The notes beneath the pieces were generated by a model that worked only from the letters and a program-made list of their open reading frames with translations, was not told the DNA's origin and did not search any database. The translations under genes were made by a program, and so were the position numbers. 64,000 nucleotides of DNA, from IMG/VR virus record IMGVR_UViG_3300045973_000169, positions 1-64,000 of that record; one strand, given 5' to 3'. Shown here one piece after another: positions 30,827 through 57,927 of this stretch. Numbering within the stretch: position 1 is the stretch's first letter; each line of letters starts with the position of its first letter.

Positions 30827-30911
30827 GGGGTTGTAGCGGATCGGCCTTCTAAGCCGTGCACATAACACCGTAATGGATCGCATGCTGGTTCGAATCCAGT
30901 CAGCCCCTCCA
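30827..30911 (+). tRNA. Atypical D-armless tRNA-Arg(TCT)-like RNA
   Basis: GGGGTTG/CAGCCCC acceptor stem, CGGC-CTTCTAA-GCCG anticodon arm, GCTGG-TTCGAAT-CCAGT T arm, CCA. No D arm; long variable region. Confidence 0.7.
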
Positions 30912-32282: not shown

Positions 32283-33762
32283 TGGATATTAATATTGAGA
32301 TTGAGTTAAAAAGAGATTCTACTAACTCATATCCTGGTAAAGTTAAGATTAATAATGCTAGTGATGGCAGAGTTAGATTAGCTTTAATAAATCCTGATAG
32401 AATTATTATATTGGATGGGAAAGAACTTACTCAAGCCATAAGTATTGTTATAGGAGAAAACTTATGAAAGGTGATGTTGTGTTATTGCCTGGAGATGTTG
32501 TCTTATTGTCTTTAGAAGAGAAGCCAACATCATTCTGCCATATAATCGACGTTCAATCAGATCCTGATTGTGTTAGTGGTATAGGATTTCATGTTACATT
32601 TAATCATCTTCAATTACCGGTTACTCAAATGACTTGGAAACTTAATCAGGATCATCTTAATCTTGGATGGACTATGGGTGGACAATTCATGAAATTTGAT
32701 TTGGTAAGTACACCAGTTAAACCTGTTGAAAAGAAAAAAGCAGAAGCTGTTAAAGTGGAAGATAACGAATTTATATGAAAGGATAACAAATGGCAGATGG
32801 TAAAGTTTACCCTATTGTCCCTGGCTTAAAGATGATAGGAGAAAAGGGCATAGAACGAATAGAATCGCTTGATGAAGCCTTTTTAATTCGTCTCTATGGT
32901 CATACTAAGGATTGTGTTCAGAAGATCCTTATACGCAAAATCTGTGAGCTTAAAGGGTATAATCTTGTTGTTGATGACAATGATCCTCTTATAGCTTAAA
33001 AAGGAAAGAATATGATTAATGTAATACTCTGTATAGTTTTAGCTGTACCATTTATTGCTATTTTTGGGACTGTCTTTTATAAGGTCTTTATCAAAAATGA
33101 AGTGCTAGATGGGGATATGGAAGACTTTGTTGGTGCTGAACCCGAACTTTCTGAGTTCGGAGAAATTACAATCGAGGAGACTGCTGATGGCGAAGAAGGA
33201 GTATAGTATTGAGAAGGTTGTTGCTGAAGTTTCAAGGCGCACAAAGATGGCTGGTAAAGTCATCGATGTTAAACGTGGTTCTGTTGGGATTGCTTTTCTT
33301 GGCAAGTTGGATTTTCTTGGTAAGATGGGCTATATTGTCCGTTTTGTTGGGTAAGTAATATGTATCCAGAATGGTATGGCCGCTTTAGTAGAATAGTAGG
33401 AAAAGACTTTGTTGTAAAGTTTATTGAAAGATGTATTGGGACAGTTGTTTGGGCTGAACCAGATGCTTCACATAAGGTTGGTGAATTCAGAAATGATTGG
33501 CTGACTGAAGCATTCACAAAAATTGATTATGAAAAGGAAAAAGAAATGGGAAAATTAAAAAAAGGTGATATCATCATTGGTAGTCAGCATAAGACTACCG
33601 GAGCAATCAGTATTGCTGCTGAACCAAAAGTTCACACAAATCTGCTTACTGCACAGCAGGAAGGCGAGCGTCTCGCCAAAGTTACAACTGACAAGAAGTT
33701 TGTTGTCCTTGAAGTAAAAGGTGTTGTCTCAGTAGCTACAACTATCTGGGAATAAGAAATAC

Positions 33763-33885
33763 AGCGCGATAGGCCAATAGGTAGGCCCCGAGAAATCAAG
33801 TGTCTCTGTATAAGAGAACGTTCGGCAATCAAAACTTTCACTCTTAATGACGAAATTCCAGGTTCGAGTCCTGGTCGCGCTGTCA
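33763..33885 (+). tRNA. tRNA-Lys(CTT)-like RNA with a ~48-nt insert between the D and anticodon arms
   Basis: AGCGCGA/TCGCGCT acceptor, GGCC-AATAGGTA-GGCC D arm, TCA-CTCTTAA-TGA anticodon arm, CCAGG-TTCGAGT-CCTGG T arm; no encoded CCA. Confidence 0.7.
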
Positions 33886-33944: not shown

Positions 33945-34460
33945 ATGGAGGTAACTGTAATGCCAACTTGCATAAAATGTAATGATGTTTTTCCTGTCTG
34001 GATGTGGATAGATGGAAAAAAGAAAAATTTAAATAATAGAAAATATTGCATTGAATGTTCTCCTTTTGGGTCACGTAATACAAAAAAACTTGAATTAGAA
34101 GATGATTCTCCTTTTAAGATTTGTATTGTTTGTAAAAAGCAATTTGAATATATAAGAGAGAAAGGACATAGAAAAACAAAATGTAATTCTTGCCACACAA
34201 GAGAAAAAAATCAGTCTGTTAAAATAAGAGCGGTTAATTATCTTGGTGGAAAATGTTCTATTTGTGGTTATAAGAAGAACTATAGTGCATTATCTTTTCA
34301 TCATAAAGATATAACACAAAAAGATTTTCCTATAGCTAATAGTAAAGGGTTAAAATGGGAGCTTATGCAAAATGAACTTGATAAGTGTGTTCTACTTTGC
34401 TCTAACTGCCATGCAGAATTACATTATCCAAGTCTTGATGTACAAAGTTATCTGTTTTAA
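33945..34460 (+). CDS. HNH endonuclease (same family as 30912-31253)
   Basis: LGGKCSICGY...FHH...KDF...ELDKCVLLCSNCH. Confidence 0.88.
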   Translation: MEVTVMPTCIKCNDVFPVWMWIDGKKKNLNNRKYCIECSPFGSRNTKKLELEDDSPFKICIVCKKQFEYIREKGHRKTKCNSCHTREKNQSVKIRAVNYLGGKCSICGYKKNYSALSFHHKDITQKDFPIANSKGLKWELMQNELDKCVLLCSNCHAELHYPSLDVQSYLF

Positions 34461-35123: not shown

Positions 35124-35463
35124 TATCCTTGGCTATACGAAAACGATTAATAAAGATACCTTCTCATAATAGGTTAATTATGAACTTCGACTTGATATCG
35201 GATCATAATTTTGACTGTCTAATACACATGATAAATTATATTTAAGCGCGTAGCGCTCATCTAAAAGCTCAGGTACATCAGGAGTTAGGTTACAAGAATC
35301 ATTTAAACTGCGTAGAAGCCTTTCGTGGGTGGAGCGGGATTCAAGTCTTTTTAGTTCAAGATATAAGACTTATGTTTACATGATTCGATAAAACCCATGA
35401 ATTATTTTATAAGCATTTATCTTTTAAGCTTTTCGTTTGTACATGGCTGTATAGCCAGGGATA
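35124..35463 (+). ncRNA. Putative ~340-nt structured RNA
   Basis: Closing 15-bp helix TATCCTTGGCTATAC/GTATAGCCAGGGATA (one G-U), inner helix GAAAA..TTAATAAAGATA/TATCTTTTAA..TTTTC; ORF-free. Confidence 0.7.
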
Positions 35464-35476
35464 TAATATAAATTTA

Positions 35477-35554
35477 AGACTAGTTTCTGCAAACCACACA
35501 AACATGAGAAGCCCTGAACTGGGCAAAGTGGGGTAGAGGGAGAGAACTAGTCTG
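35477..35554 (+). ncRNA. Stem-C(A/T)GCAA element 1 (in the 5' leader of the DUF2828 gene)
   Basis: TAAG-start, AGACTAGTT/AACTAGTCT stem, CTGCAA, A/C-rich linker, ends CTG. Confidence 0.65.
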
Positions 35555-35600
35555 TTAAAATCAATCTTCCTCTACCTCACCCAAATTAAAGGAGAGAAAA

Positions 35601-36977
35601 ATGGCTGCAAAATATACATTAACAGAAAATGGGGCTAAGACCCTATCCGATAGTGGCAATCCTTTAGTGAATTTGTTTTTTACTATTGGGTCTGCTCGTA
35701 ATAACCCTGAAGTAACAAGAGCTAACTTTAAGAAAGCTTTTGAGTTTGATGCATTGAGAGCTTCTGCTATAGTTCTTTGTGCTCGTGATATTCGTCATAA
35801 TGGTATGGGCGAACGTCAGATCTTTCGTACGCTTCTTAAAGACATGGCTGGTAGTGGTAAGATCTATACTCAGAAGATAGTTGAGCTTATCCCTGAGATT
35901 GGCCGTTTTGATGACCTCAAAGCAGTTGAAGGTACTGTTTATGAGAAGATGGCTATTGATATCTTTGCTAAGGCTATCCGTGAGCGTAATGTTCTTGCTG
36001 CTAAATGGGCAAAGCGTGAAGATAAGAAACTTCAGTTAGCTTTAGGGCTGAATGAAGCTGGACTCCGTAAGCTCTTAGCATCAATTCGCAAAGAGCATAT
36101 CGTTGAGGCCAAGATGTGTCTTAAGGACTGGAAATCTATCGAGTATGGTAAAATTCCTTCAGTTGCTGGTACACGTTATTCAAAAGCATTTCATAAGAAT
36201 GATGGTATTCGTTATCGTGCTTTCATTGATAACCCTGATACTAAGGTGAATGCATCTGCTTCTTTCCCTTATGATGTATATCGTATGTGGAGTAGCAGAA
36301 CTTGTCAGCCTCCTGAGATTAACAAGTATTGGAATAATCTGAAAGAGCTTGAGCTTTCAGGTAGTGTCCTTGCTATTGTTGATACATCAGATTCTATGAC
36401 TTGGTTTAAGGTTGCTGGTAGCCTTGTTCCAAGGGATATTGCTGTATCATTGGGCGTCTACTGTGCTCAGAAGATTGAGGGTAAGTTCAAGAATAATATG
36501 ATGACCTTCAATTCTAACCCTGAGTTCTTTACATTGCCTACAGGTGATGTATGTCAGGCATTTGATAAGGTAATGAGATCCAATATTGGTGGCAGTACTA
36601 ACATTCAGAAAGCTTATGAGAAGATTCTTTCCATGGCTCAGACTGTTAATGCTACTGATAAGGATATGCCTAAGTTCATCCTTATTATATCTGATATGCA
36701 GTTTAATGGCTGCACAGATAGACCTTCTGATACTGTCTATGACAATATGAGAAAGAAATATAAGGCTGCTGGATTCACTATGCCTAAAGTGATATTCTGG
36801 AATATGGATGCTCGTCATGATCAGTATCCTACTGCTTCATTTCAGAAAGAAACTGCTTTAATTAGTGGTTTTAGTCCTAATATTCTCAAGGCAGTTCTTA
36901 AGGGGCAAGATGTTGTTATCACCCCTGAAGGAATAATGAATGAGGCAATTGCTCCATTCATTGAGATGTTAAAATAG
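35601..36977 (+). CDS. DUF2828-family helical + vWA (MIDAS) protein, Ro60/TROVE-like by inference
   Basis: TENGA, RDIR..G.GER..FR, G..DDL, LAAKW..RE, MIDAS DTSDS, ISDMQF, VIFWN, SGFSP. Confidence 0.8.
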   Translation: MAAKYTLTENGAKTLSDSGNPLVNLFFTIGSARNNPEVTRANFKKAFEFDALRASAIVLCARDIRHNGMGERQIFRTLLKDMAGSGKIYTQKIVELIPEIGRFDDLKAVEGTVYEKMAIDIFAKAIRERNVLAAKWAKREDKKLQLALGLNEAGLRKLLASIRKEHIVEAKMCLKDWKSIEYGKIPSVAGTRYSKAFHKNDGIRYRAFIDNPDTKVNASASFPYDVYRMWSSRTCQPPEINKYWNNLKELELSGSVLAIVDTSDSMTWFKVAGSLVPRDIAVSLGVYCAQKIEGKFKNNMMTFNSNPEFFTLPTGDVCQAFDKVMRSNIGGSTNIQKAYEKILSMAQTVNATDKDMPKFILIISDMQFNGCTDRPSDTVYDNMRKKYKAAGFTMPKVIFWNMDARHDQYPTASFQKETALISGFSPNILKAVLKGQDVVITPEGIMNEAIAPFIEMLK

Positions 36978-37173
36978 ACCAGCCGAGCCTATGCTCTACC
37001 TAGTAGGATTCTTTCTGGGATTTGAACCCAGCAGAAGATACAAAGTGATTGAGTAAGCTCAAATAGGATTCATGAAGGTACTGCAGTGCATCATGATTAA
37101 CTGGTTGCGAATTAGTAGAGAGGGACTGTTGCTATTACGATTGAGCTTTACGTGTATAGATGCTTGTCCCTCT
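36978..37173 (+). ncRNA. Multi-hairpin structured RNA
   Basis: ACCAG/CTGGT closing helix with internal hairpins (TCTTTCTGGG/CCCAGCAGAAGA, TTGAG/CTCAA, TCATGA/TCATGA), then an AGAGGGAC/GTCCCTCT hairpin. Confidence 0.45.
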
Positions 37174-37180
37174 AGTTTTT

Positions 37181-37364
37181 GGGCACATGACGAAATGGTA
37201 AACGTGAGAGGAAAGTATATACTTAGTATTTATTTAATAAGTGGATTAATTGCCCATAAGTTAATTATTAGAAAAGTATATGACTACCTCTTGGTGATGA
37301 TGGTGACGGCTAGCCTTTATTATGTCATCTAGCCTTACAGGTTCGAGTCCTGGGGTGCCTACCA
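37181..37364 (+). ncRNA. Expanded tRNA-like RNA (184 nt)
   Basis: GGGCAC/GTGCCT-ACCA acceptor, ACG-AAATGGTAAA-CGT D arm, AGAGG/CCTCT anticodon stem extended by an ~80-nt AT-rich hairpin, long variable arm, CAGG-TTCGAGT-CCTG T arm. Confidence 0.65.
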
Positions 37365-37376
37365 ATAATAAATTTA

Positions 37377-37625
37377 AGAGAGATTACAGCAAACAAAAAC
37401 TTTTTTTAGACAAAAAACGATAGGGTTCGATTCCCCTAAGCCGGGTGGTGGTGAGATTTCTCTCTGTATTAAATTAGTAGATATATAAGGATCCATTCAG
37501 CAACTAAAAACTTTTTTAATTGATAAAAAAACAAAAAGTGATCCTGTCTTAAAGATATATAAGGAAGAGTTCAGCAATCCAAAAAACAATCAAATGCTAA
37601 CTTGAAAATGTTAAAAATCTTCCTG
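37377..37625 (+). repeat. Tandem array of three stem-CAGCAA-anticodon-loop elements (37377-37466, 37488-37546, 37562-37625)
   Basis: Each has TAAG start, a covarying stem (AGAGAGA/TCTCTCT, AGGATC/GATCCT, AGGAAGA/TCTTCCT), CAGCAA, AAAAAC, a small hairpin, and a CTG end. Confidence 0.8.
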
Positions 37626-37968
37626 TTTTAATTAAGGTTGTAGGTTATCCAGTATCAAAACCTTCTGCGAATAGATTTTATACGACTTGGCGATTAGGAA
37701 ACTTAAGCGTTACTTTAGAGTATCGAAAGTCCTAGTCCAAATCCAATTAATACGATGACAGCTATTTTAATAATATACCTTGGCACTAGGCGACAAAGGA
37801 CACTGTTATTAATTTAGGGCGATGTGATTATTAATTGAACAACAGTATGCCAATTCATACTGTAATTAATACTGTACGAGCAGTATAAAAGCAGATTGGT
37901 CTCTACTGCTTAACTGGGGCGAAGGACTCAGCAAAAAATGGAGACTACTTAATTAGTTAAGAGGTATT

Positions 37969-38439
37969 ATGAAAGGTAATAAAAAGATCATCGAGACTCT
38001 GAACACAAGACTTGGAGAAGAGTTAACAGCTATTCACCAATATGTAGTTCATTCTCAAATGGTAGAAAATTGGGGCTATAGTAAACTTTCTAAGTATATT
38101 ATGGACCGAGCAAAAGATGAGATGCGCCATGCAGAAATGCTTATGGAACGTATTGTATTCCTTGAAGGTGCACCAGATACAACTAAATTGGGACCTATTG
38201 CAATTGGGCCTAAAGTACCTGATATGTTCAAAAATGATCATTCATCAGAAGTAACAGCAATAAAGAATTATAATGAAAGTATTAAACTTGCAGTAGCTGA
38301 AGGAGATAATGGAACAAGAGAAATCTTAGAGTCTATTCTTCGTGATGAAGAAGGTCACATTGATGCTATCGAAGCCAATCTTTCTCAGCTTGAACAAATG
38401 GGAACTCAGATTTATCTTGCTGAACAACTAGAGGACTAA
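37969..38439 (+). CDS. bfr: Bacterioferritin
   Basis: MKG...ELTAIHQY..H...NWG, DEMRHAE (heme Met), FLEG, DEEGHID ferroxidase ligands. Confidence 0.93.
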   Translation: MKGNKKIIETLNTRLGEELTAIHQYVVHSQMVENWGYSKLSKYIMDRAKDEMRHAEMLMERIVFLEGAPDTTKLGPIAIGPKVPDMFKNDHSSEVTAIKNYNESIKLAVAEGDNGTREILESILRDEEGHIDAIEANLSQLEQMGTQIYLAEQLED

Positions 38440-39593: not shown

Positions 39594-40508
39594 ATGTTTA
39601 GTAAAATTCAAGTATTCCAAGGAGAAAATCCTGATGTTTGGAAGTATGTATTTGAGAAAGATGATATATGTGTAGAAGCTGTTCTCTATAGATATGAGTC
39701 TTTTCAGAAACGTACTGTTCTTTGTATATCAGTCCAGAGTGGTTGTCCTGTTGGATGTGTATTCTGTGGTACTGGTAAGAAGTTTATTCGTAATTTAACT
39801 GCTGATGAAATACAATATCAAGTTGACCATGTAATTAATTGGGTTTCGTCTCAGATTGATTGGCCTCTTAACTCTGTTTGTGAAAAATTTCAGATTATGT
39901 TTATGAGTATGGGTGAGCCTATGCTTAACTGGTCTGAAGTAGATAAAGCAATTCGTAGATTGAATGATACATATCGTAATGCTCAATTGCTTATTTCAAC
40001 TATTGGAGTTAAGGACTACAGTGCATTTTTTAAACTATGTGATCTATCTCGTGAAATAGGTAAAGTTGGCTTACAGTTCTCTTTACATTCAGGTGATGAT
40101 GAAGAAAGAGATGAAATTATCCCATTTAAAAACAAGATGTCTATTCGTGAAATTAGAGATGCTGGTATTATGTGGAATAGTTATACTCATAGACCAGTTT
40201 ACTTGAATATATGTGTGGATGAATTTAATCTTTCTCCTGAAGAACGTGAGAGGATTAAGGATTTGTTTCCCCCAAGTATATTTAGTCTTACGTTCTCTGT
40301 TATATGCGAATATGAGAATGGACAAGTAGTTAACCAAACTTTGAAAGATAAGATTGATAGGAAGATGCAAAATATCATGGCTAACTTCCTTTGTCATAGT
40401 TATAATGTTCGTAAGTTTGATCCTGCTGGACAAGATGATATTGGGGCTGGTTGTGGTCAACTTTGGTACACTCAATCATGGATGAAGGAACATTTTAAAG
40501 GTAAGTAA
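39594..40508 (+). CDS. RlmN/Cfr-family radical SAM RNA methyltransferase-like protein
   Basis: CISVQSGCPVGCVFCGTG (CxxxCxxC), MSMGEP, QFSLH, DIGAGCGQL. Confidence 0.85.
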   Translation: MFSKIQVFQGENPDVWKYVFEKDDICVEAVLYRYESFQKRTVLCISVQSGCPVGCVFCGTGKKFIRNLTADEIQYQVDHVINWVSSQIDWPLNSVCEKFQIMFMSMGEPMLNWSEVDKAIRRLNDTYRNAQLLISTIGVKDYSAFFKLCDLSREIGKVGLQFSLHSGDDEERDEIIPFKNKMSIREIRDAGIMWNSYTHRPVYLNICVDEFNLSPEERERIKDLFPPSIFSLTFSVICEYENGQVVNQTLKDKIDRKMQNIMANFLCHSYNVRKFDPAGQDDIGAGCGQLWYTQSWMKEHFKGK

Positions 40509-40843
40509 GATGGAAAAAGTTAAATGTGATTCATGTAAGGAAACTTTTACAATTAATATGTGGAGAGGTTATCTTAACCTTGAATATAATAGTGAATTAG
40601 AGGCATATGAAACAGTATGTCCTCATTGTGGGCATAAAGGATCATAAATGTTAACATTTTGTTTAATAGTTTTAATAGTTTATCTAACTCCTACTTTATT
40701 ACTTTTAGCACTTTGTGTGTATTTAAGAACAATAGCTAAAGCAGATATTGATATAACACTTAAGAATACATTTAGTTGGTCTTTTGCTTGGCCCTGGTGG
40801 GTAATTATAGGGTTGATTGAAGACTTTAAAAGGAGAAGAGAAA

Positions 40844-41671
40844 ATGATTCTAATTGATAATAGAGAAGTTAAGTTTGGTAAGTTTCCAAACGGTGAAAGT
40901 AATCTGAACTATAACACTATCGAATTCTGTCATGATAGTGATGTTATTCTTAAGTTTGAGTCTGATATTGATTTATTTAATCTTTATATTCTCAAGAAGT
41001 ATATGGATTCTTGTATTTGCTATAATAAGATTTCATTAAAGGTTCTTTATTTCCCTTACTCACGTATGGATAGAGAGAATGATTTCTATACTTTTAATCT
41101 TAAGTATGTTGCTCAGATGATTAATGATATGAACTTCTATGAAGTTATTGTTGGGGATATACATTCAGATGTAGCTCCTGCTTTAATCAATAACTATACT
41201 GGATATTCTTCTATTGATATTCTGTTTGAAACATTCAGAGATGAAATTGGTATTTCTGATTTTAGTATTATGTTCCCTGATGCTGGTGCACAGAAACGTT
41301 ATGGAACTGGCTTTGCTTATCATACTCTTGTTGGATTTAAAGAGCGTGATTTTAGTGATGGGCGTATCCTTGGAATGAAAGTCTTTGGTGATGTACATCC
41401 TGGGAAGCCTGTTGTTATCATTGATGATTTATGTTCTAAAGGTGGAACATTTATTGGAGCAGCCAAAGCTTTGAAAGAAGCTGGTGCTGGTGATATCTAT
41501 CTTATTGTTGGACATTGTGAGAATACTATTGATGAAGGAGCTGTCTTTACATCTGGACTCATTAAGAAGGTCTATACTACTGATAGTATCTATAGTAATC
41601 CTACAACTATTTGGAATACTTCTGATAGATTGTATGTCCATAAACTAATTGTACATGAAAAGAGATACTGA
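40844..41671 (+). CDS. Ribose-phosphate pyrophosphokinase-like (probable Adps, NARP1)
   Basis: FPNGE, YFPYSRMDR, DIHS, FPDAGA, IIDDLCSKGGTF, YTTDS. Confidence 0.88.
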   Translation: MILIDNREVKFGKFPNGESNLNYNTIEFCHDSDVILKFESDIDLFNLYILKKYMDSCICYNKISLKVLYFPYSRMDRENDFYTFNLKYVAQMINDMNFYEVIVGDIHSDVAPALINNYTGYSSIDILFETFRDEIGISDFSIMFPDAGAQKRYGTGFAYHTLVGFKERDFSDGRILGMKVFGDVHPGKPVVIIDDLCSKGGTFIGAAKALKEAGAGDIYLIVGHCENTIDEGAVFTSGLIKKVYTTDSIYSNPTTIWNTSDRLYVHKLIVHEKRY

Positions 41672-42156: not shown

Positions 42157-42622
42157 ATTTTATGGTAAGAGTAAACCTTTCTTTGAAGGTAGTAACTTTT
42201 ATCCTGCAAAATTTAAAGATAGTGCTGGTACTATATGGGATACAACTGAACATTATTTTCAGGCTATGAAGTTTGAAGCTGGATCTGAAATTCAAATTGG
42301 ACCAGAAAGCTTTATCCCAATTCGTAAGCATATACATGATCAGCCTACTCCTATGAAAGCAGCAAACGAAGGACGTAGGAGAGATTTTCCACTCCGTAGT
42401 GATTGGGAACAAGTAAAAGACCAAATGATGTATAATGCATTACGTTATAAGTTTACACAGAATCCAGTATGTAAACAGGCTCTTCTTGATACTGGTGATG
42501 CTGAGTTAATTGAAGCTTCTCCTGTTGATTATTACTGGGCAGAAGGTGCAGATGGTACAGGCAAGAATATGCTTGGTAAACTGTTAGTTAAATTACGAGA
42601 GGAGATCAGAAATGAACAATAA
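42140..42622 (+). CDS. NADAR (YbiA-like) protein
   Basis: SNFY, TEHYFQAMKF, R.DW..VK..M...L..KF.QN, LIEASP.D.YW, G.N.LG. Confidence 0.9.
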   Translation: MENVIRFYGKSKPFFEGSNFYPAKFKDSAGTIWDTTEHYFQAMKFEAGSEIQIGPESFIPIRKHIHDQPTPMKAANEGRRRDFPLRSDWEQVKDQMMYNALRYKFTQNPVCKQALLDTGDAELIEASPVDYYWAEGADGTGKNMLGKLLVKLREEIRNEQ

Positions 42623-44261
42623 GTTATTAGCTGTATTAGCATGTGATGGATATAAGATTGGTCATAAAGATCAAGATGCTCCTGGCGTTGAAAATAAGTA
42701 TTATACATGGACTCCTCGTTCAAACAAATATCTTCCTGAAGTTGAGAAGGTAGTTGTCTTTGGTGTTCAAGGTTTTATTAAGATTCATCTTCTTCAGTTC
42801 TTCAATGAGAACTTCTTTGAATTAGATAAAGAGTATGTTGTCTTTGAATACAAGCGTATTCTTAAATCATACTTGTTCAAAGAGGAGATTGATACAACTC
42901 ATATTGAGGAACTGCATGACTTAGGTTACTTGCCTTTAAAGATTAAAGCTATTAAAGAAGGGATAAGAGTCCCAATCAGAACTCCTGTTTTAACTGTTGA
43001 GGTTACTAATGGGAAATTTGCATGGTTGGGTGGATATATTGAAGATATTCTTTCTACTTCTCTTTGGCAGCCAATGACTGTTGCTTCTATTGCTTATGAG
43101 TATAAGAAACTCTTTAAAGAGTTTGCAATGGAAACTGTAGGAAATACTGAATTCTGTAAGTTCCAAGGTCATGACTTTAGTTATCGTGGCTTGATGGCTG
43201 GTCTTGATGCTATTCAGGCTTCAGGTTCAGCTTGGTTACCTTTGTTTGTTGGAACAGATAATATTCCATCTATTCCTTATATGGAAAATGTCTATGGAGC
43301 TGATAGCTCTAAAGAGATTATTGGGTGTAGTGTACCTGCTTCTGAACACAGTGTAGCTGAGACCTATATGGAATTTGATGATGATGGCAATCTTATCCCT
43401 GGTTGGGAAGATGAATATCTCCGTAGATTGATTGTTGATATTTATCCTACTGGGATTGTTTCAATTGTAGCAGATACAATTGATCTCTTTGAGCTTATTA
43501 CTGTTAAGTTAGTTGCTCTTAAAGAAATCATTATGGCTCGTGATGGTAAGACTGTCATTCGTCCTGATAGTGGCAACCCTGCTGATATCCTTTGTGGATA
43601 TGTTATTAAGAAATTAAATAACCCACTTAATGGTGATGCTGATAAGTACTATCTTCCTTTTGATCGTTGGACTGATGATGGATTTAATGCTTACCAGACT
43701 ACTGATGGAAAAGTTTATAACTTTGATCATAAAGAATTATCTATTGCTGAAACTAAAGGTGTAGTTGAACTTCTTTGGGAGATCTTTGGTGGAACTATCA
43801 ATGCCAAAGGATACAAAGAATTAGACTCACACATTGGTACTATCTATGGTGATTCTATTACTATTTCTTTAGCTAGAGAGATCTGTAAAAGACTTAAAGC
43901 TAAAGGCTTTGCTAGTACTAACTGGGTTGCTGGTGTTGGTAGTTACAGCTTGTTAGGACAGTTAAGTCGTGATAGTCTTGGATTTGCACTTAAAGAGACC
44001 TCTATTACTAGAAATGGTAAAGAGATAGCTGTCTTTAAGGATCCTAAGACTGATGATGGAACTAAGAAATCAGCTAAAGGACGTGTAGTAGTTGTACCTT
44101 CTCCTATTGGTGATGGTTCAATGCGTACTATTGATAACCTTACCAAAGAACAGGAAGAAAAGGTTGGAGCTTTCAACTTACTCCAGACTGTATTTGAAGA
44201 TGGTGTATTGCCTGCAGAAACAACATTAGCAGATATTCGTATTTGTTTAGGTGGAATTTAA
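42612..44261 (+). CDS. Nicotinamide phosphoribosyltransferase-like (probable Namat, NARP1)
   Basis: DGYK.GH, HDFSYRG, SVPASEHSV, SIVADT, IRPDSG, IYGDSIT, KDPKTD...KKSAKG. Confidence 0.9.
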   Translation: MNNKLLAVLACDGYKIGHKDQDAPGVENKYYTWTPRSNKYLPEVEKVVVFGVQGFIKIHLLQFFNENFFELDKEYVVFEYKRILKSYLFKEEIDTTHIEELHDLGYLPLKIKAIKEGIRVPIRTPVLTVEVTNGKFAWLGGYIEDILSTSLWQPMTVASIAYEYKKLFKEFAMETVGNTEFCKFQGHDFSYRGLMAGLDAIQASGSAWLPLFVGTDNIPSIPYMENVYGADSSKEIIGCSVPASEHSVAETYMEFDDDGNLIPGWEDEYLRRLIVDIYPTGIVSIVADTIDLFELITVKLVALKEIIMARDGKTVIRPDSGNPADILCGYVIKKLNNPLNGDADKYYLPFDRWTDDGFNAYQTTDGKVYNFDHKELSIAETKGVVELLWEIFGGTINAKGYKELDSHIGTIYGDSITISLAREICKRLKAKGFASTNWVAGVGSYSLLGQLSRDSLGFALKETSITRNGKEIAVFKDPKTDDGTKKSAKGRVVVVPSPIGDGSMRTIDNLTKEQEEKVGAFNLLQTVFEDGVLPAETTLADIRICLGGI

Positions 44262-49929: not shown

Positions 49930-50652
49930 ATGGCACGTTATGCTATAAGTGACATACATGGTTGTTTAAGAACCTTTAAGAAAGTGTTACGTTCAGTTGA
50001 CTTTAATAAGAGCGATACGCTTATATTACTAGGTGATTATATTGATAGAGGGTTAGACTCTAAAGGTGTTATTCAATACATTATTGATCTTATTGCAGAA
50101 GGCTATGATGTTATTCCTTTGTGTGGGAATCATGAACAATTCCTTATAGAGTCTATTGGTAATAATGCAGTTCAAACTATGTGGGAACGTAATGGTGGAG
50201 ATAAATGCCTTAGAAGTTATGGTGTTAATCATCCTAGTTTAATGCCACATGAACATATAAGTTTTATAAGATCTTTACCTCTTATGCATGTTGAAAGAGA
50301 TTATGTCTTTGTTCATGCAGGGTTAGATTTCTGTAAAGAAGATCCTATTGAAGAATCAAGTGATGAGACTATTCTTTGGAGTAGGATGCATCGCCTTGCT
50401 GGAGATTCACGTAGGAAGAAACTTGGTGGAAGAGTCTTGGTTACAGGACATACTCCTACAGATAAGAAAACAATGATTACAATGGCTATGGGTGAAGATA
50501 TGATTACTATTGACAGAGGCTGTGTCTTTGAAGGATCTAATTATAACCATATGGCTATTTTTAATCTAGATACAAAACAGTTTAATTTTATTAAAAATAT
50601 TGATACTTTAGAAAATGATTGGGTGAGTAGACATGGATATGCAGGACGATAG
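49930..50652 (+). CDS. Ser/Thr protein phosphatase family metallophosphoesterase
   Basis: SDIHG, LGDYIDRG, GNHE, FVHAG, GHTP, ID.GC. Confidence 0.9.
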   Translation: MARYAISDIHGCLRTFKKVLRSVDFNKSDTLILLGDYIDRGLDSKGVIQYIIDLIAEGYDVIPLCGNHEQFLIESIGNNAVQTMWERNGGDKCLRSYGVNHPSLMPHEHISFIRSLPLMHVERDYVFVHAGLDFCKEDPIEESSDETILWSRMHRLAGDSRRKKLGGRVLVTGHTPTDKKTMITMAMGEDMITIDRGCVFEGSNYNHMAIFNLDTKQFNFIKNIDTLENDWVSRHGYAGR

Positions 50653-51429: not shown

Positions 51430-52167
51430 ATGATAGGTGAAAAGTTTGGTAAGTTAACAGTTGTCTATTTCAATGATTTAAATAAGAGAAAAGAGAAACT
51501 ATGGTTATGTCTTTGTGATTGTGGAAAAGAAATAATTGTAAAAACAAGAAATCTTAAAATTGGAGCAACAAAAAGTTGTGGTTGTTTATCAACAGGCCCA
51601 AAAATTTCTGATCTTACTGGGAATAAATTTGGTGATTTAGAAGTTATATCTTATGCACATCAAGATAAATGGAGAACAAGTTTTTGGAATTGTAGATGTA
51701 TTTGTGGTAATTATACTGTTGCTAGTTCCGCAAATCTTAAATCTGGAAATCGTATTTCTTGTGGATGTAAACATGATGAATGGAAACATAATAAACCAAA
51801 AGGTCAAGATAGTCCACATTGGAATTCAGATATAATTGATAGAAATAGCAGACGACTTGACTATGAAGCAAAAGACTGGGCAATAAGAATTAAAGAACGT
51901 GATAAATATAAGTGTTTAGTTTGTGGTAAATCTCCAAGTGGAGAACTAACAAGTCATCATCTATATAGCTATAATGACTATATAGATTTAAGATATGATA
52001 TTGATAATGGAATTACTTTATGCGAGCAATGTCATTATTCTTTCCATAAAAAATATGGATTCAAAAAGAACACAAAAGAACAATTTAAGGAGTGGAAAAA
52101 TGAGTTATATGGCAGTAATAGCACGGTTGAAGAATGTCCGTGCTCATCCGAATGCAGACCGGATTAA
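51430..52167 (+). CDS. HNH homing endonuclease (paralog of 8141-8854)
   Basis: WLCLCDCG..KSCGC and WNCRCICG..SCGC; RDKYKCLVCG..SHH..NGITLCEQCH. Confidence 0.88.
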   Translation: MIGEKFGKLTVVYFNDLNKRKEKLWLCLCDCGKEIIVKTRNLKIGATKSCGCLSTGPKISDLTGNKFGDLEVISYAHQDKWRTSFWNCRCICGNYTVASSANLKSGNRISCGCKHDEWKHNKPKGQDSPHWNSDIIDRNSRRLDYEAKDWAIRIKERDKYKCLVCGKSPSGELTSHHLYSYNDYIDLRYDIDNGITLCEQCHYSFHKKYGFKKNTKEQFKEWKNELYGSNSTVEECPCSSECRPD

Positions 52168-53470
52168 ATTAGCTAATTGTTTAGGCTATCAAGTTATTGT
52201 AGGGCTTGAGGCTAAAGATGATGATATTGTTATTTTATTTCCTGATGATGGGCAATTAAGTCATGAATATATTTTTAATAATAACCTATATAACAAAGCA
52301 GAGATGAATAAAGATCCTAGTGTTAAAACTGGATTCTTTGATCATAAACGTAGAGTAAGATGTCAGACATTTAGAGGAGAGAAAAGTGAAGCTTATACTG
52401 CTGATATCAGAAGCGTGGAATTTACTGGGGTTGATATTGAAAGTCTCTATGTGGGTGTCCGTTTTGATGTTCTTAATGATATTAGCATTTGCAATAAGTA
52501 TATAACTCAAGCCACTAAGGATGCTGCTAATAAGAATGGGAATAAAGATAAGGTTAAACTTAATGTTATTCTTAAGAAAATGTTCCCTGAGCATATAGAT
52601 ACTGAACAGATTAGATTTGCAAGAGATGAAGATCTAATTGGATTAGTTACTATTACTCATAAGCTTCATGGTACAAGTGCTAGAACTGGATATATTAATA
52701 CTCCTGTTGAAGTACCTTTAAAATGGTATCATAAACTTTGGAATCAGTATGTTAAGTTAGTTGACTATCTCCCTCCTAAGTATACTCACGAGCAGAATGA
52801 AGCTTTATATTTTGCTCCTACTACTATCAAGAAATGGAAAACTATTTTTGGTACACGTAGGGTAATTAAAGGTCCTGTTAATGAAGAAGCAACTGATTAT
52901 CGTTCTTTATGTGCTAAACGATTAGCTCCTTTTATTGAAAAGGGTGAAATCTGGTATTATGAAATTGTAGGGTATGAAGATACTGGTGCTCTTATTATGG
53001 GGAGTGTTTCTACTAAAGAAATGCCTAAAGAATTCCAAAAAAGGTTTGGTGAAACTATTACTTACAAGTATGGTTGCTTACCTGGGACATGGAATATTTA
53101 TGTTTATCGTATTACTCATCAGAATGAAGATGGTGTTATCTATGAACTTCCATGGGCACAAGTAAAAGCTAAATGTAATAATGCTGCTATTAAGCATGTT
53201 CCTGAAATTGATGTTATTTTAACAGAAGTAGCTTTAGATGGTACAATTGATGTTGAAGTTTTAAAGCAAACAATTGAACATTACACTGAAGATGAAGATA
53301 TTGCTGAACCCCTTGATGCTTCTCATATACGTGAAGGTATCTGTGTTAGGATTGATAATCTTGAGACTGGTAAAATGAAAATATTCAAGAATAAAACTTT
53401 TGTATTTAAGGTGCTTGAAGGTATTGTTAAGGATTCTGGTGTAGTTGATACAGAAGAAGCTGAAGGGTAG
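52100..53470 (+). CDS. RNA ligase, Rnl2/DRB0094-like, with N-terminal tRNA-binding OB-like domain
   Basis: HPNADR, motif I KLHGTS, YEIVG, REGICV, K.K.F.F; AAGGAG SD before ATG 52100. Confidence 0.85.
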   Translation: MSYMAVIARLKNVRAHPNADRIKLANCLGYQVIVGLEAKDDDIVILFPDDGQLSHEYIFNNNLYNKAEMNKDPSVKTGFFDHKRRVRCQTFRGEKSEAYTADIRSVEFTGVDIESLYVGVRFDVLNDISICNKYITQATKDAANKNGNKDKVKLNVILKKMFPEHIDTEQIRFARDEDLIGLVTITHKLHGTSARTGYINTPVEVPLKWYHKLWNQYVKLVDYLPPKYTHEQNEALYFAPTTIKKWKTIFGTRRVIKGPVNEEATDYRSLCAKRLAPFIEKGEIWYYEIVGYEDTGALIMGSVSTKEMPKEFQKRFGETITYKYGCLPGTWNIYVYRITHQNEDGVIYELPWAQVKAKCNNAAIKHVPEIDVILTEVALDGTIDVEVLKQTIEHYTEDEDIAEPLDASHIREGICVRIDNLETGKMKIFKNKTFVFKVLEGIVKDSGVVDTEEAEG

Positions 53471-55948: not shown

Positions 55949-57169
55949 ATGTTTAGATCTTTAAATGATAAAGCCTACTTAGTTGGAGGCGCAGTACGTG
56001 ATCTCCTATTAGGCCATGAACCTAAAGATCGAGATTATGTTATTGAATGTACAGAAGCTGAATTTGAGAGAGTATTTCCCGATGCTGAAAAGGTCGGGAA
56101 TACTTTCCCTGTTTATTTACATCCTGAGACTGGTGATGAGATAGCTTTAACAAGAACAGAAAGACCAACAGAAACTAAATTTGGTGCTCTTGGTTCATAC
56201 CAAGGATTTGAAATTATTGGAGTTGGAGTGTCTATTCTTGATGATCTTAGAAGAAGAGATTTTACTATTAACTCTATTGCTCAAAAATATCTTACGAAAG
56301 AAATCATTGATCCTACTAATGGTAAGTTTGATTTAAAAAATAAGATGTTACGCTGTGTTAATTCTGAAGCTTTTAATGATGACCCTTTAAGAATCTATAG
56401 AGCTTGTAGATTTGCTGCTAGATTTGATTTTAAAGTTGAGATGCATACATTTAAATTAATGAGAGACAATTGTCATAATCTTTTCTTTGTAGAAAAAGAA
56501 AGAGTAGTTAATGAATTAAAGAAAATGTATTCTCAGACTGATAAGCCAGGTATATTCTTTAGGTTATTATTTGAGCTTGGTGGTATGGCACATCATTTTG
56601 ATCCTATTTTAGACCTTACTGTTATCCCTGCTGGACCTAAACAATACCATGGTACTAATACTGGGTTTGATCATACAATGGAAGTGATAGATAGATGTAA
56701 GGCTAATGGATTAAGCTTTGATTGTTTTATAGCTTGTCTATTCCATGATACAGGTAAAGCTTCAACTGATCCTTCTATATTACCTCACCATTATGGGCAT
56801 GAAAATGGGTCTTATCGTATTAATAAAGAGTTCTTTGCTGAGAATAGGTTTGATGCTAGTACGGTAGATTTAGCTTTAACTGTAGGGAAGAATCATATGA
56901 AGACTCATGTTATAACTAAGATGAGGACTAATAAAGTAGTTGATTTTCTTAGAGGAATTAGAAGATTAGATGAGTTTATTGATTGTTGTAATTGTGATCA
57001 TCCTTTTACTGATAATACTTTAGATTATATCAATCTTTTCAAACAAGTAAGAAAAGAAACTGTTGTTGAAATTCCTAAAGAAACAAAAGATAAATATGAA
57101 TTTGTTGGTAGGTTATACACTAAAGCCCTTGGGCAAAAGATAAAGGAATTTAAAGAAAATGGCAAATGA
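55949..57169 (+). CDS. cca: tRNA nucleotidyltransferase (CCA-adding class II) with HD domain
   Basis: VGGAVRD, DRD, DL.RRDFTIN, DDPLR..R..RFAARF, ERV..E, HDTGK. Confidence 0.9.
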   Translation: MFRSLNDKAYLVGGAVRDLLLGHEPKDRDYVIECTEAEFERVFPDAEKVGNTFPVYLHPETGDEIALTRTERPTETKFGALGSYQGFEIIGVGVSILDDLRRRDFTINSIAQKYLTKEIIDPTNGKFDLKNKMLRCVNSEAFNDDPLRIYRACRFAARFDFKVEMHTFKLMRDNCHNLFFVEKERVVNELKKMYSQTDKPGIFFRLLFELGGMAHHFDPILDLTVIPAGPKQYHGTNTGFDHTMEVIDRCKANGLSFDCFIACLFHDTGKASTDPSILPHHYGHENGSYRINKEFFAENRFDASTVDLALTVGKNHMKTHVITKMRTNKVVDFLRGIRRLDEFIDCCNCDHPFTDNTLDYINLFKQVRKETVVEIPKETKDKYEFVGRLYTKALGQKIKEFKENGK

Positions 57170-57563: not shown

Positions 57564-57927
57564 AACGTTTGAGAGAAGGTTTTACTTTTACACAAGACCA
57601 ATCAATAGGTATGACTTGTAGAGTAGAAAATAATGAAGTTGTCCTTATCCCTTATATAAGAGAGACTGGACAACTTCTATTTAGATGGATGGCAGAATAT
57701 GAAATTAAATAAAATAAAAGAATCAGGGATCTATTTAGTTATAGGACCACCTGAATGTGTTTCTTTGTTACCTACTGAAAATATATTATTTCTTTATCCT
57801 AATGGTGATCTTGTTATGGAAGGTAATAATTATATGGATTGTTTAAATGATGGTGAAGATGAGATAATTGAAGTTATCTGTCTTGCTAAATCAGAGAACC
57901 ATCCATCTTTGAGAGAAGGTGTTTTTG

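What the first reader, a model, noticed from the sequence alone, without database searches (positions are those of the whole stretch)
37181..37364. 184-nt tRNA-shaped RNA with an ~80-nt extended anticodon arm
Seen: acceptor stem with CCA, D arm and T arm are present. The AGAGG/CCTCT anticodon stem continues into a long AT-rich hairpin (TATATACTT/AAGTATATG; ATTAATT/AGTTAAT capped by GCCCATA), and the variable arm is a long GGCTAG/CTAGCC helix. The insert is too small for a group I intron, and compensatory pairing argues against simple decay. Inference: a tRNA mimic (elbow plus CCA) or an intron-like substrate for the phage ligase.
Basis: partly seen in the sequence, partly recalled or inferred. 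Interest (0 to 1): 0.65.

Follow-up and report, generated by a model that had tools for sequence, protein, structure and literature searches.

The report
tRNA-like RNA beside phage Ro60-like gene
The 184-base stretch is a real tRNA-shaped but non-decoding RNA gene in a 207-kb phage; it sits in a cluster of small structured RNAs around a gene for a Ro60-like RNA-binding protein, which ties phage "tRNA look-alikes" to a Y-RNA-type system.

Summary
Observation confirmed. Window 37181-37364 (+) folds as a cloverleaf with all tRNA elbow nucleotides and an encoded ACCA end. An 81-nt rod replaces the anticodon arm and the variable region is 45 nt. ARAGORN and Rfam's tRNA model do not call it, and no 7-nt anticodon loop can be made by removing the insert, so it is not a decoding or intron-bearing tRNA.

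It lies 204 nt downstream of a DUF2828 protein whose AlphaFold model matches Ro60 across its whole length. The locus is an RNA array:
- a second tRNA-order RNA at 33762-33884;
- four copies of a widespread "stem + UUCAGCAA" RNA, with 112 model hits in 60 of 85 DUF2828 loci, all on the gene's strand, with strong covariation and often carrying tRNA-like modules.

The finding aligns best with L003:1938-2062, a related tRNA-order RNA from another phage contig that scores 47 bits as tRNA. That RNA is a circular permutation of a YrlA-like element.

Architectural precedents are T5 RNA1 and T4 species 1 RNA, both stable tRNA-like RNAs of unknown function in phages without DUF2828.

Best reading: a stable tRNA mimic of the phage's Ro60-like/RNA-repair module. 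Expression could not be tested, and the long arm has no conserved counterpart.

The parts
37181..37364 (+). The finding: a 184-nt tRNA-order, non-decoding tRNA-like RNA. It has acceptor + ACCA, D arm, an 81-nt rod in place of the anticodon arm (37207-37291), a 45-nt variable region (37292-37336) and a T arm (37337-37353).
   Evidence: Sequence; folds; custom cloverleaf scan; best alignment to L003:1938-2062, z 5.1; not called by ARAGORN or Rfam.
35601..36977 (+). 458-aa DUF2828/DUF7788 protein with a Ro60 fold (HEAT-repeat ring plus vWA domain with a conserved DxSxS MIDAS motif).
   Evidence: phrog_850, E 1e-111; Pfam PF11443 + PF25043; AF2 pLDDT 92, pTM 0.91; Foldseek top 13 PDB hits are all Ro60/TROVE, TM up to 0.68; invariant D261/S263/S265.
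33762..33884 (+). Second tRNA-order RNA. It has acceptor, D arm, the hairpin TCTCT-GTATA-AGAGA followed by the box GTTCGGCAA, and a T arm. It is the counterpart of L003:1938-2062 and contains a circularly permuted stem-box element.
   Evidence: ARAGORN -i calls it tRNA-Glu with a 41-nt 'intron'; cloverleaf scan; 83 of 111 identical to the L003 element, z 12.7; sequence.
35473..35557 (+). Stem + UUCUGCAA element in the 5' leader of the DUF2828 gene, ending 44 nt before the ATG, just downstream of a sigma-70-like promoter (35438-35467).
   Evidence: Model R1, 28 bits, E 4e-4, not in the training set; promoter scan; the same leader position occurs in 37 of 85 loci.
36978..37180 (+). Structured spacer between the DUF2828 stop codon and the tRNA-like RNA. 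It ends in the stem AGAGGGAC 37119-37126 / GTCCCTCT 37166-37173 plus a T run 37176-37180 (terminator-like, or a 5' leader for RNase P). It also holds a hairpin that is an antisense T arm (37016-37032).
   Evidence: Sequence; fold z -1.84. Function not established.
37373..37466 (+). Stem + UACAGCAA element whose loop carries a T-arm-like hairpin (GGG-TTCGATT-CCC, 37423-37435). It starts 13 nt after the CCA of the finding.
   Evidence: Pattern scan; partial R1 hit; Rfam tmRNA T-arm fragment hit.
37484..37549 (+). Stem + UUCAGCAA element (short, about 60 nt, Class-I-like).
   Evidence: R1 60.4 bits (in the training set); Rfam Dicty_Class_I_RNA 25.8 bits, full length.
37558..37628 (+). Stem + UUCAGCAA element, tandem to the previous one.
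   Evidence: R1 62.7 bits (in the training set).
51995..53470 (+). RNA ligase. Together with a phosphoesterase (49930-50652) and a CCA-adding enzyme (55949-57169) it forms an RNA/tRNA repair toolkit in the same window.
   Evidence: phrog_968 E 1e-55, phrog_246 E 9e-52, phrog_2244 E 3e-86.

Best explanation
The stretch encodes a stable, non-decoding tRNA mimic.

Shown: it keeps the acceptor stem with an encoded ACCA end and the D/T elbow of a class-II-like tRNA. The anticodon arm is replaced by an 81-nt helical rod and the variable region is enlarged. It belongs to an array of small structured RNAs that flank a Ro60-fold (DUF2828) gene.

Inferred mechanism:
1. It is transcribed after the DUF2828 gene.
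2. RNase P cuts at G37181 and the 3' end is trimmed to, or kept at, CCA.
3. The L-shaped core then engages proteins that recognise tRNA shape, while the RNA cannot decode.
4. Like YrlA-type Y RNAs, it would work with the Ro60-like protein and the phage's RNA ligase, phosphoesterase and CCA-adding enzyme in tRNA/RNA surveillance or counter-defence, as a scaffold or a decoy.

Its direct binding to the Ro60-like protein is the weakest step, because it lacks the UUCAGCAA box that marks the other RNAs of the locus.
For: - Cloverleaf with all elbow nucleotides.
- The long arm is more stable than shuffles (z -2.61).
- It is one of only two such uncalled cloverleaves in 206.6 kb, and both flank the DUF2828 gene.
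- Its best alignment is to L003:1938-2062 (z 5.1, against 1.5-2.9 for the phage's own tRNAs). That RNA scores 47 bits as tRNA despite a 55-nt insert, has the same ACCA end, and is followed by the same tandem stem-box elements.
- Further tRNA-order RNAs with long inserts score as tRNA: L004:474-595 at 52.3 bits and L057:5830-5940 at 37.8 bits.
- DUF2828 has the Ro60 fold.
- 46 of 86 DUF2828 loci hold tRNA genes, all on the same strand.
- Stem-box elements often carry T/acceptor/D modules in YrlA order, with Rfam YrlA scores of 28-38 bits.
- RNA repair genes lie in the window.
- Precedents that are expressed: T5 RNA1, annotated as a tRNA-like stable RNA and folding with the same architecture, and T4 species 1 RNA.
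- The inserts are single copy, not a mobile repeat.
- The overlapping ORFs match no family.
Against: - There are no expression data: only one pond-metagenome DNA run holds the region.
- ARAGORN and Rfam do not call it.
- The whole-molecule fold is not significant.
- There are two mismatches at the acceptor/T junction.
- The long arm and the enlarged variable helix have no counterpart in any relative, so covariation is untested.
- It lacks the UUCAGCAA box.
- T4 and T5 have analogous RNAs but no DUF2828 homolog, so the tRNA-like RNA need not depend on the Ro60-like protein.
Confidence: 0.55

Rival explanations
1. Decaying paralog. It is a dead copy of the tRNA-order RNA at 33762-33884 (or of a class II tRNA) that lost its box or anticodon loop and picked up AT-rich hairpin insertions. 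It may be transcribed but has no function of its own.
For: Detectors fail. There are mismatches at positions 7-66 and 49-65. The box present in the L003 and 33762 homologs is missing. The variable helix is no better than shuffles. No relative shares the arm.
Against: Every tertiary-interaction nucleotide, the T loop and the encoded CCA are intact. The inserts form continuous helices, and the long arm is significantly stable. Enlarged arms are the rule in T5 RNA1 and T4 rnaC, which are stable RNAs.
Confidence: 0.22
2. Processing handle. The tRNA-like fold serves mainly as an RNase P / 3'-end processing signal. It would separate the DUF2828 mRNA from the downstream stem-box RNAs and define their ends (tRNA punctuation); the released tRNA-like piece would be a by-product.
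For: It sits between a terminator-like hairpin with a T run and three tandem stem-box elements, the first starting 13 nt after the CCA. The same order (tRNA or tRNA-like RNA, then element) occurs at 90899-90984 / 90989, L003, L004, L083 and EC6. Nine elements start 6-9 nt after a tRNA.
Against: Only 9 of 112 elements follow a tRNA. A simple handle would not need an 81-nt rod or an enlarged variable arm.
Confidence: 0.13
3. Intron-bearing tRNA. The insert is removed by an endonuclease and the phage RNA ligase, giving a working tRNA.
For: An RNA ligase, a phosphoesterase and a CCA-adding enzyme are encoded 13-20 kb away. ARAGORN interprets the sister element 33762-33884 as a tRNA with an intron.
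Against: No splice register leaves a canonical loop: only two give U33, both with a pyrimidine at 37 and a Val anticodon on a class-II-like body. The 45-nt variable region is outside the tRNA range. There is no Rfam group I/II intron hit. The insert is a plain hairpin.
Confidence: 0.04

Closest known systems
Phage T5 RNA1 (T5s03, 144 nt, annotated 'tRNA-like stable RNA with unknown functions')
   Same: It has the same architecture on folding: acceptor, D arm with GG, an anticodon arm expanded to about 58 nt, a long variable hairpin and a consensus T arm. It lies in a tRNA cluster beside other small stable RNAs.
   Different: T5 has no DUF2828 homolog and no stem-box elements. No sequence homology was shown. 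The arm here is longer (81 nt) and the CCA is encoded.
Phage T4 species 1 RNA (rnaC, 139 nt) and species 2 RNA (rnaD)
   Same: They are small stable RNAs at the end of the tRNA cluster. rnaC folds with a consensus T arm plus two long arms (z -4.6). Their function is still unknown.
   Different: The rnaC fold shows no evident D arm. T4 has no DUF2828. No sequence similarity was tested beyond the T arm.
YrlA (Rfam RF02553), the tRNA-mimicking Y RNAs encoded next to bacterial and phage Ro60 (PMC4201824)
   Same: It is a tRNA-like acceptor/D/T module encoded beside a Ro60-fold protein. Neighbouring elements in related loci have the YrlA order T arm - closed acceptor - D arm inside a terminal stem. 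M. smegmatis YrlA is cut by RNase P and receives CCA.
   Different: The topology is reversed: here the ends are at the acceptor with a free CCA, and the anticodon side is closed. There is no GNCGAA Ro-binding motif in context and no Rfam hit. The protein is Pfam DUF2828, not TROVE.
Dictyostelid Class I RNAs (Rfam RF01414; PMC7919456), relevant to the neighbouring elements rather than to the 184-nt RNA itself
   Same: The stem-box elements share all listed hallmarks: start AAG with an invariant G, a 6-7 bp covarying stem, a box ending UUACAGCAA next to the 5' strand, about 60 nt, low GC, an end CUGU whose C pairs the 5' G, and tandem clusters. Six full-length RF01414 hits score 26-34 bits.
   Different: All hits fall below the gathering score of 41.5. 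The host domain differs. The only known direct Class I binder is an RRM protein. Whether dictyostelids have a DUF2828 protein was not tested.

Membership tests
Canonical (decoding) tRNA | 7-bp acceptor stem, discriminator and CCA end | tested here: met
   37181-87 / 37354-60 with one G.U and one A x G mismatch, then A37361 and CCA.
Canonical (decoding) tRNA | D arm with G18G19 and T arm with the T-Psi-C loop | tested here: met
   D loop AAATGGTAAA; T loop TTCGAGT with G53-C61.
Canonical (decoding) tRNA | 5-bp anticodon stem closed by a 7-nt loop with U33 and purine 37 | tested here: not met
   75 nt lie between AGAGG and CCTCT. No deletion register gives a canonical loop.
Canonical (decoding) tRNA | Recognised by ARAGORN or by Rfam RF00005 at >=29 bits | tested here: not met
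   No call. No hit at E<=10 on 206 nt.
YrlA / bacterial Y RNA (RF02553) | Rfam gathering score of 69 bits | tested here: not met
   No hit on the finding. Neighbour-type elements in relatives reach 28-38 bits.
YrlA / bacterial Y RNA (RF02553) | Encoded next to a Ro60 ortholog | tested here: inconclusive
   It lies 204 nt downstream of a protein with the Ro60 fold. That protein is Pfam DUF2828, not TROVE, and sequence-level links to Ro60 are only E~0.07.
YrlA / bacterial Y RNA (RF02553) | 5'/3' ends form the Ro-binding stem with a GNCGAA motif; the acceptor is closed by a loop with no free CCA | tested here: not met
   The ends are at the acceptor with ACCA, and the anticodon-side helix is closed.
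YrlA / bacterial Y RNA (RF02553) | Bound by the Ro60 protein | not testable with these tools
   Needs RIP or a gel shift.
Stem + UUCAGCAA (Class-I-like) element, model R1 | AG...CUG terminal stem with the adjacent CAGCAA box | tested here: not met
   R1 hits 35473, 37373, 37484 and 37558 but not 37181-37364. The box is absent from the arm.
tRNA with a group I intron | Intron of >=200 nt with a conserved catalytic core | tested here: not met
   The insert is a 75-nt plain hairpin. There is no Rfam intron hit.
tmRNA | tRNA-like domain plus a tag reading frame and pseudoknots | tested here: not met
   ARAGORN -m finds none. The only Rfam tmRNA hit is a 13-nt T arm at 37423-35.
Phage tRNA-cluster stable tRNA-like RNAs (T5 RNA1, T4 rnaC) | tRNA-like acceptor/T arm with expanded arms, in or beside a phage tRNA/ncRNA cluster | tested here: met
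   Folds of the T5 and T4 RNAs show the same design. This is an architectural match only.
Phage tRNA-cluster stable tRNA-like RNAs (T5 RNA1, T4 rnaC) | Accumulates as a stable small RNA in infected cells | not testable with these tools
   No RNA run holds the region.

The most novel reading that the evidence does not exclude
The DUF2828 Ro60-like proteins of phages have their own class of Y-RNA-like partners. This family has more than 8,800 clusters at 50% identity.

The partners would be ~60-nt 'AAG-stem-UUACAGCAA-loop-stem-CUGU' RNAs that can carry tRNA-like modules in linear or circularly permuted order. The 184-nt tRNA-shaped RNA would be a box-less member of this set.

These RNAs would be the same kind of RNA as the Class I RNAs of dictyostelid amoebae, so far thought unique to Dictyostelia. 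That would suggest a shared DUF2828-RNA particle in phages and eukaryotes.
Probability: 0.3. Interest if true: 0.9.

Novelty: new variant of a known kind. Interest (0 to 1): 0.7.

Why it matters
Stable tRNA-like RNAs in phage tRNA clusters (T4 species 1, T5 RNA1) have had no known function for decades. This locus places such an RNA inside a recognisable system: a Ro60-fold protein, a conserved family of box-bearing small RNAs that often carry tRNA-like modules, and RNA repair enzymes.

A Felix-O1-type relative of the protein (Bas63 gp130) was reported to counter the ppl defence system, and its authors guessed that neighbouring "tRNAs" might be Y RNAs. The motif and model defined here make that guess directly testable in culturable phages such as EC6, Felix O1 and Bas63.

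If the similarity to dictyostelid Class I RNAs reflects a shared protein partner, it would also suggest what those abundant eukaryotic RNAs bind.

Tried and rejected
- **Close relatives.** blastn of the region against 50,697 phage records gave no match. An exact D-arm pattern in viral contigs gave none. The single-protein locus search in viral contigs gave none. The best protein relative is only 59% identical, so orthologs of the long arm could not be found and covariation of that arm could not be tested.
- **Expression.** Only one pond-metagenome DNA run holds the region. Read laying was not used because no RNA run exists.
- **Mobile-element idea.** The arm and variable inserts have no other copy in the genome or in the loci.
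- **Protein-coding idea.** The ORFs 37072-37332 (+) and 37374-37496 (-) match no PHROG.
- **Box C/D snoRNA-like Rfam hits on 37178-37258** (14-18 bits, E 0.6-5). I took these as chance. They only reflect UGGGCA/UGCCCA pairing plus an AUGACGA string.
- **A YrlA-like permuted tRNA on the minus strand at 36980-37060.** It has a T arm but no convincing D stem and no Rfam hit.
- **A strict V-region motif search for more family members** was too narrow. MAFFT misaligned the finding because of its insert.
- **Whether dictyostelids encode DUF2828.** This could not be answered with the tools. The profile search returns only phage-sized best hits without names, the Atlas shows eukaryotic clusters but no dictyostelid label, and no paper mentions it.
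- **Sequence-only search of the protein against PDB** found nothing significant. The Ro60 link rests on the fold comparison.

Full report
**Setting.** The window is the first 64 kb of a complete 206,638-bp virus record (34% G+C) from a pond metagenome, with about 19 ordinary tRNA genes. The finding lies in a ~1-kb stretch without credible ORFs (36978-37968). This stretch sits between a 458-aa gene (35601-36977, +) and a bacterioferritin gene. The ORFs that overlap the finding match no phage protein family.

Reading the sequence gives a cloverleaf in normal tRNA order:
- acceptor 37181-87 / 37354-60, followed by A and an encoded CCA;
- U8;
- a 3-bp D stem with the loop AAATGGTAAA;
- the stem AGAGG/CCTCT, which runs on into a nearly continuous AT-rich helix (81 nt in all, 37207-37291);
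- a 45-nt variable region holding the GGCTAG/CTAGCC helix;
- a T arm with loop TTCGAGT.

The unconstrained MFE fold recovers the acceptor, the long arm, the variable helix and the T arm.

The statistics are mixed. The whole molecule is not more stable than shuffles (z -1.45). The long arm is (z -2.61). The variable helix is not (z -0.57).

ARAGORN (also with introns allowed) and Rfam (tRNA, YrlA, tmRNA, introns; E<=10 on 206 nt) do not call it. A cloverleaf scan that I wrote found only two uncalled candidates in 206.6 kb with a long middle and a G+C-rich consensus T arm: this one and 33763-33885. The scan required an acceptor with at most one mismatch, a D arm with GG and a T arm with TTCRANN.

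The two inserts are single copy, so they are not a mobile repeat.

**It is not a decoding or intron-bearing tRNA.** I tried removing any stretch between the two strands of the AGAGG/CCTCT stem. Only two registers leave U33. Both give anticodon GAC with a pyrimidine at position 37, on a body with a class-II-type D arm and an over-long variable region. The insert is a plain hairpin and matches no intron family.

**The neighbouring protein is Ro60-like.**
- The 458-aa protein is PHROG 850, "RNA-binding protein" (E 1e-111), and Pfam DUF2828 + DUF7788.
- Sequence searches against solved structures are at best marginal: TROVE/Ro60 at E~0.07 in the vWA part.
- An AlphaFold model built from 63 homologs (pLDDT 92, pTM 0.91) has Ro60/TROVE structures as its 13 best PDB matches over its full length. 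These include Xenopus Ro (TM 0.68), human Ro60, Deinococcus Rsr and the Ro60 of Thermus phage phiLo.
- The MIDAS residues DxSxS are invariant.
- The family is very large: 8,844 clusters at 50% identity and homologs in 711 phage records.
- Ro60 proteins bind Y RNAs. The bacterial and phage YrlA RNAs carry a tRNA-like module (PMC4201824; PMC12135203).
- For the Felix-O1-like phage Bas63, a preprint reports that gp130 resembles Ro60, lies upstream of the tRNA array and counters the ppl defence. The authors speculate that some "tRNAs" are Y RNAs. That gp130 belongs to this DUF2828 family is my inference from the Felixounavirus EC6 homolog.

**The locus is an RNA array.** I fetched 85 non-redundant loci that encode relatives of the protein. 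In 46 of 86 loci (counting one duplicate) ARAGORN finds tRNA genes within a few kb, all on the strand of the gene.

A second kind of element stood out. It is a 6-10 bp terminal stem that begins AG(R) and ends (Y)CUG, with the box (N)U(U/A)CAGCAA directly after the 5' strand and a loop of 30-200 nt.
- A pattern scan found 132 copies on the gene's strand and 2 on the other strand in 514 kb.
- A covariance model built from 48 short copies (A2, R1) found 112 hits at E<=0.01 in 60 of 85 loci. All were on the gene's strand and none lay inside the gene.
- 37 loci have a copy ending 3-98 nt before the matched start of the gene, that is, in its leader.
- The stem covaries strongly: 99.3% of cells are paired against 68.7% in shuffles, 235 cells show changes on both sides, 0 of 500 shuffles reach the observed score, and slid registers reach at most 47%. 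The alignment is fitted to the model and the seed copies were chosen for pairing, so I treat the strand asymmetry as the unbiased control.
- In the phage's own genome the model hits 35473-35557 (the leader of the gene; not in the training set), 37373, 37484 and 37558 (tandem, directly after the finding) and 90989-91062 (directly after tRNA-Leu). There is nothing else of note in 206.6 kb.
- In phage EC6 the only three hits in 86 kb lie between tRNAs within 1 kb downstream of the DUF2828 gene.
- In Pseudomonas phage Milchi four of five hits lie in the tRNA array downstream.
- T4 and T5, which have tRNA clusters but no DUF2828 homolog, have no hit. That is only two controls.

**tRNA-like modules are part of this RNA family.** Of the 70 elements that are at least 85 nt long, 17 contain a stringent T-arm hairpin. 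That is 1.68 per kb, against 0.012 per kb on the opposite strand. Several show the YrlA order T arm - closed acceptor stem - D arm inside the terminal stem, and reach sub-threshold YrlA scores of 28-38 bits. Others show D arm - anticodon-like arm - T arm, with the terminal stem taking the place of the acceptor.

Conversely, some RNAs are in tRNA order with the stem-box element closed into a hairpin in place of the anticodon arm:
- L003:1938-2062 (Rfam tRNA 47 bits, ACCA end);
- window 33762-33884.

These two are 83/111 identical (z 12.7). L003:1938-2062 matches L001:3240-3370 when the latter is rotated (86/111 identical, z 11.6, against z 3.6 unrotated), and the two share an identical 19-mer that includes the box. 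The family therefore exists in circularly permuted forms. This is the same relation that YrlA has to tRNA.

More tRNA-order RNAs with 50-60-nt inserts score as tRNA: L004:474-595 at 52.3 bits and L057:5830-5940 at 37.8 bits. L083:2254-2381 looks similar but Rfam did not hit it.

**Where the finding fits.** It aligns better to L003:1938-2062 (z 5.1) than to the phage's own tRNAs (z 1.5-2.9). The shared features are:
- the D arm;
- the start of the hairpin (GTATAT);
- the segment CTC..TGATRATGRYGACG before the T arm;
- the T arm and the ACCA end;
- the same downstream layout, AATTT-AAGA followed by tandem stem-box elements.

L001:5475-5564 has a nearly identical D arm but an ordinary-sized arm with an 8-nt loop.

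The conserved part is thus the tRNA body, and the anticodon side is free to vary. In the window copy the box is absent and a long hairpin stands in its place. I read it as a box-less paralog of 33762-33884.

**Known precedents.** The T5 record annotates three small stable RNAs beside tRNA-His. One of them, RNA1 (144 nt), is described as a "tRNA-like stable RNA with unknown functions". It folds into an acceptor, a D arm, a ~58-nt expanded anticodon arm, a long variable hairpin and a T arm. T4 species 1 RNA (rnaC, 139 nt) folds with a consensus T arm and two long arms (z -4.6). The architecture is therefore a known, expressed but unexplained kind of phage RNA. It also occurs without DUF2828, which weakens the idea that the tRNA-like RNA must act through the Ro60-like protein.

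**Mechanism.**

Shown:
- the anatomy;
- the Ro60 fold of the neighbour;
- the conserved RNA family around such genes;
- the permuted tRNA-like modules;
- the RNA ligase, phosphoesterase and CCA-adding enzyme in the window.

Inferred:
- the RNA is made and matured by RNase P and 3' trimming, as M. smegmatis YrlA is;
- it presents a tRNA elbow and CCA end while being unable to decode;
- it acts as a scaffold or decoy in tRNA surveillance, repair or counter-defence together with the Ro60-like protein.

Rivals are a decaying paralog, a mere processing handle, and an intron-bearing tRNA. The last is the least likely.

**Similarity of the flanking elements to dictyostelid Class I RNAs.** The only Rfam family other than tRNA and YrlA that repeatedly hits the stem-box elements is Dicty_Class_I_RNA. 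It gives six full-length hits of 26-34 bits (gathering score 41.5), all on the right strand and all coinciding with R1 hits. The description of Class I RNAs lists these features:
- about 60 nt long and low in GC;
- start AAG with an invariant G;
- a 6-bp stem with compensatory changes;
- an 11-nt box (CCUUACAGCAA type) next to the 5' strand;
- end CUGU, whose C pairs the 5' G;
- genes in tandem clusters.

The phage elements show each of these. Pfam DUF2828 occurs in viruses and eukaryotes. I could not test whether dictyostelids have it. This is a lead, not a result.

**Verdict.** The "tRNA mimic" reading is supported and the "intron substrate" reading is not. The RNA is a new variant of a known but unexplained kind (phage tRNA-like stable RNAs, Y-RNA-like tRNA mimics). 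The wider result is a conserved, previously uncatalogued RNA family tied to Ro60-like DUF2828 genes.

Main limits: there are no expression data, no ortholog of the long arm, and no test of protein binding.

Noticed in passing
window 35473-35557, 37373-37466, 37484-37549, 37558-37628; G000:C1:90989-91062; 112 hits in loci L001-L086: A widespread structured RNA motif: AG-stem, a (N)U(U/A)CAGCAA box, a variable loop, then stem-CUG(U). It occurs on the strand of DUF2828 genes in 60 of 85 loci, often in the gene's leader and in tandem arrays, with strong stem covariation. No Rfam family reaches its gathering score.
   Followed up: yes
window 37489-37546; L045:755-811; L079:4534-4587; L016:203-258 and 2370-2424; L020:2377-2428: These elements are hit full length by Rfam's Dictyostelium Class I RNA model (26-34 bits; gathering score 41.5). 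They share every hallmark described for Class I RNAs (AAG start, covarying 6-7 bp stem, UUACAGCAA box, ~60 nt, CUGU end, tandem genes). Those RNAs are reported to be unique to Dictyostelia.
   Followed up: partly
window 33762-33884 (+): A second tRNA-order RNA with a permuted stem-box hairpin in place of the anticodon arm. ARAGORN -i calls it tRNA-Glu with a 41-nt intron. It is 83/111 identical to L003:1938-2062 and lies just upstream of an HNH endonuclease gene (33945-34460).
   Followed up: yes
L001:3240-3370 versus L003:1938-2062: The two RNAs are circular permutations of each other (86/111 identical after rotation). One opens at the box stem (YrlA order); the other opens at the acceptor and has CCA.
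   Followed up: yes
L001:5475-5564 (and L002:3268-3357): A tRNA-like gene with an 8-nt anticodon loop (ARAGORN 'tRNA-???', tcaa; Rfam tRNA 46 bits), directly downstream of the DUF2828 gene in the closest relative. Its D arm is nearly identical to that of the finding.
   Followed up: partly
window 36978-37180 (+): A 200-nt structured spacer after the DUF2828 stop codon. It contains a hairpin that reads as a perfect T arm on the opposite strand (37016-37032) and a terminator-like stem plus T run ending at the first base of the tRNA-like RNA. L001 has a different ~100-nt element closed by an 11-bp stem at the same place.
   Followed up: partly
window 37180-37185 and 37251-37256: The 5' acceptor strand UGGGCA is perfectly complementary to the apical loop UGCCCA of the long arm, so an alternative or pseudoknot pairing is possible. 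A 6-mer match of this kind is expected by chance about 4% of the time.
   Followed up: no
window 49930-50652, 51995-53470, 55949-57169, 57919-59061: An RNA/tRNA repair toolkit: a phosphoesterase, an RNA ligase, a CCA-adding tRNA nucleotidyltransferase and a second nucleotidyltransferase.
   Followed up: partly
window 37969-38439, 39594-40508, 40817-41671, 42612-44261: Auxiliary metabolic genes just downstream: a bacterioferritin (151 bits, above the curated cut-off), an RlmN/Cfr-like radical SAM enzyme, a ribose-phosphate pyrophosphokinase and a nicotinamide phosphoribosyltransferase.
   Followed up: no
window 30827-30908 (+); G000:C1:87174-87249 (+): Rfam calls an 82-nt tRNA (33 bits) at 30827-30908 that ARAGORN misses. 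My cloverleaf scan finds a further 72-nt tRNA-like gene in the main tRNA array that ARAGORN also misses.
   Followed up: no
L087 (phage EC6) 4708-4776, 4869-4936, 5264-5339: In this cultured Felixounavirus the only three R1 hits of the 86-kb genome lie between tRNA genes, right after the DUF2828 gene, in a stretch left unannotated in the record.
   Followed up: partly
L092 (phage T5) 105-465 (-); L093 (phage T4) 609-872 (-): T5 RNA1 folds as a tRNA with an expanded anticodon arm and a long variable arm. T4 rnaC has a consensus T arm and two long arms (z -4.6). T5 RNAIII is also unusually stable (z -2.85). Neither phage has DUF2828 or R1 hits.
   Followed up: partly
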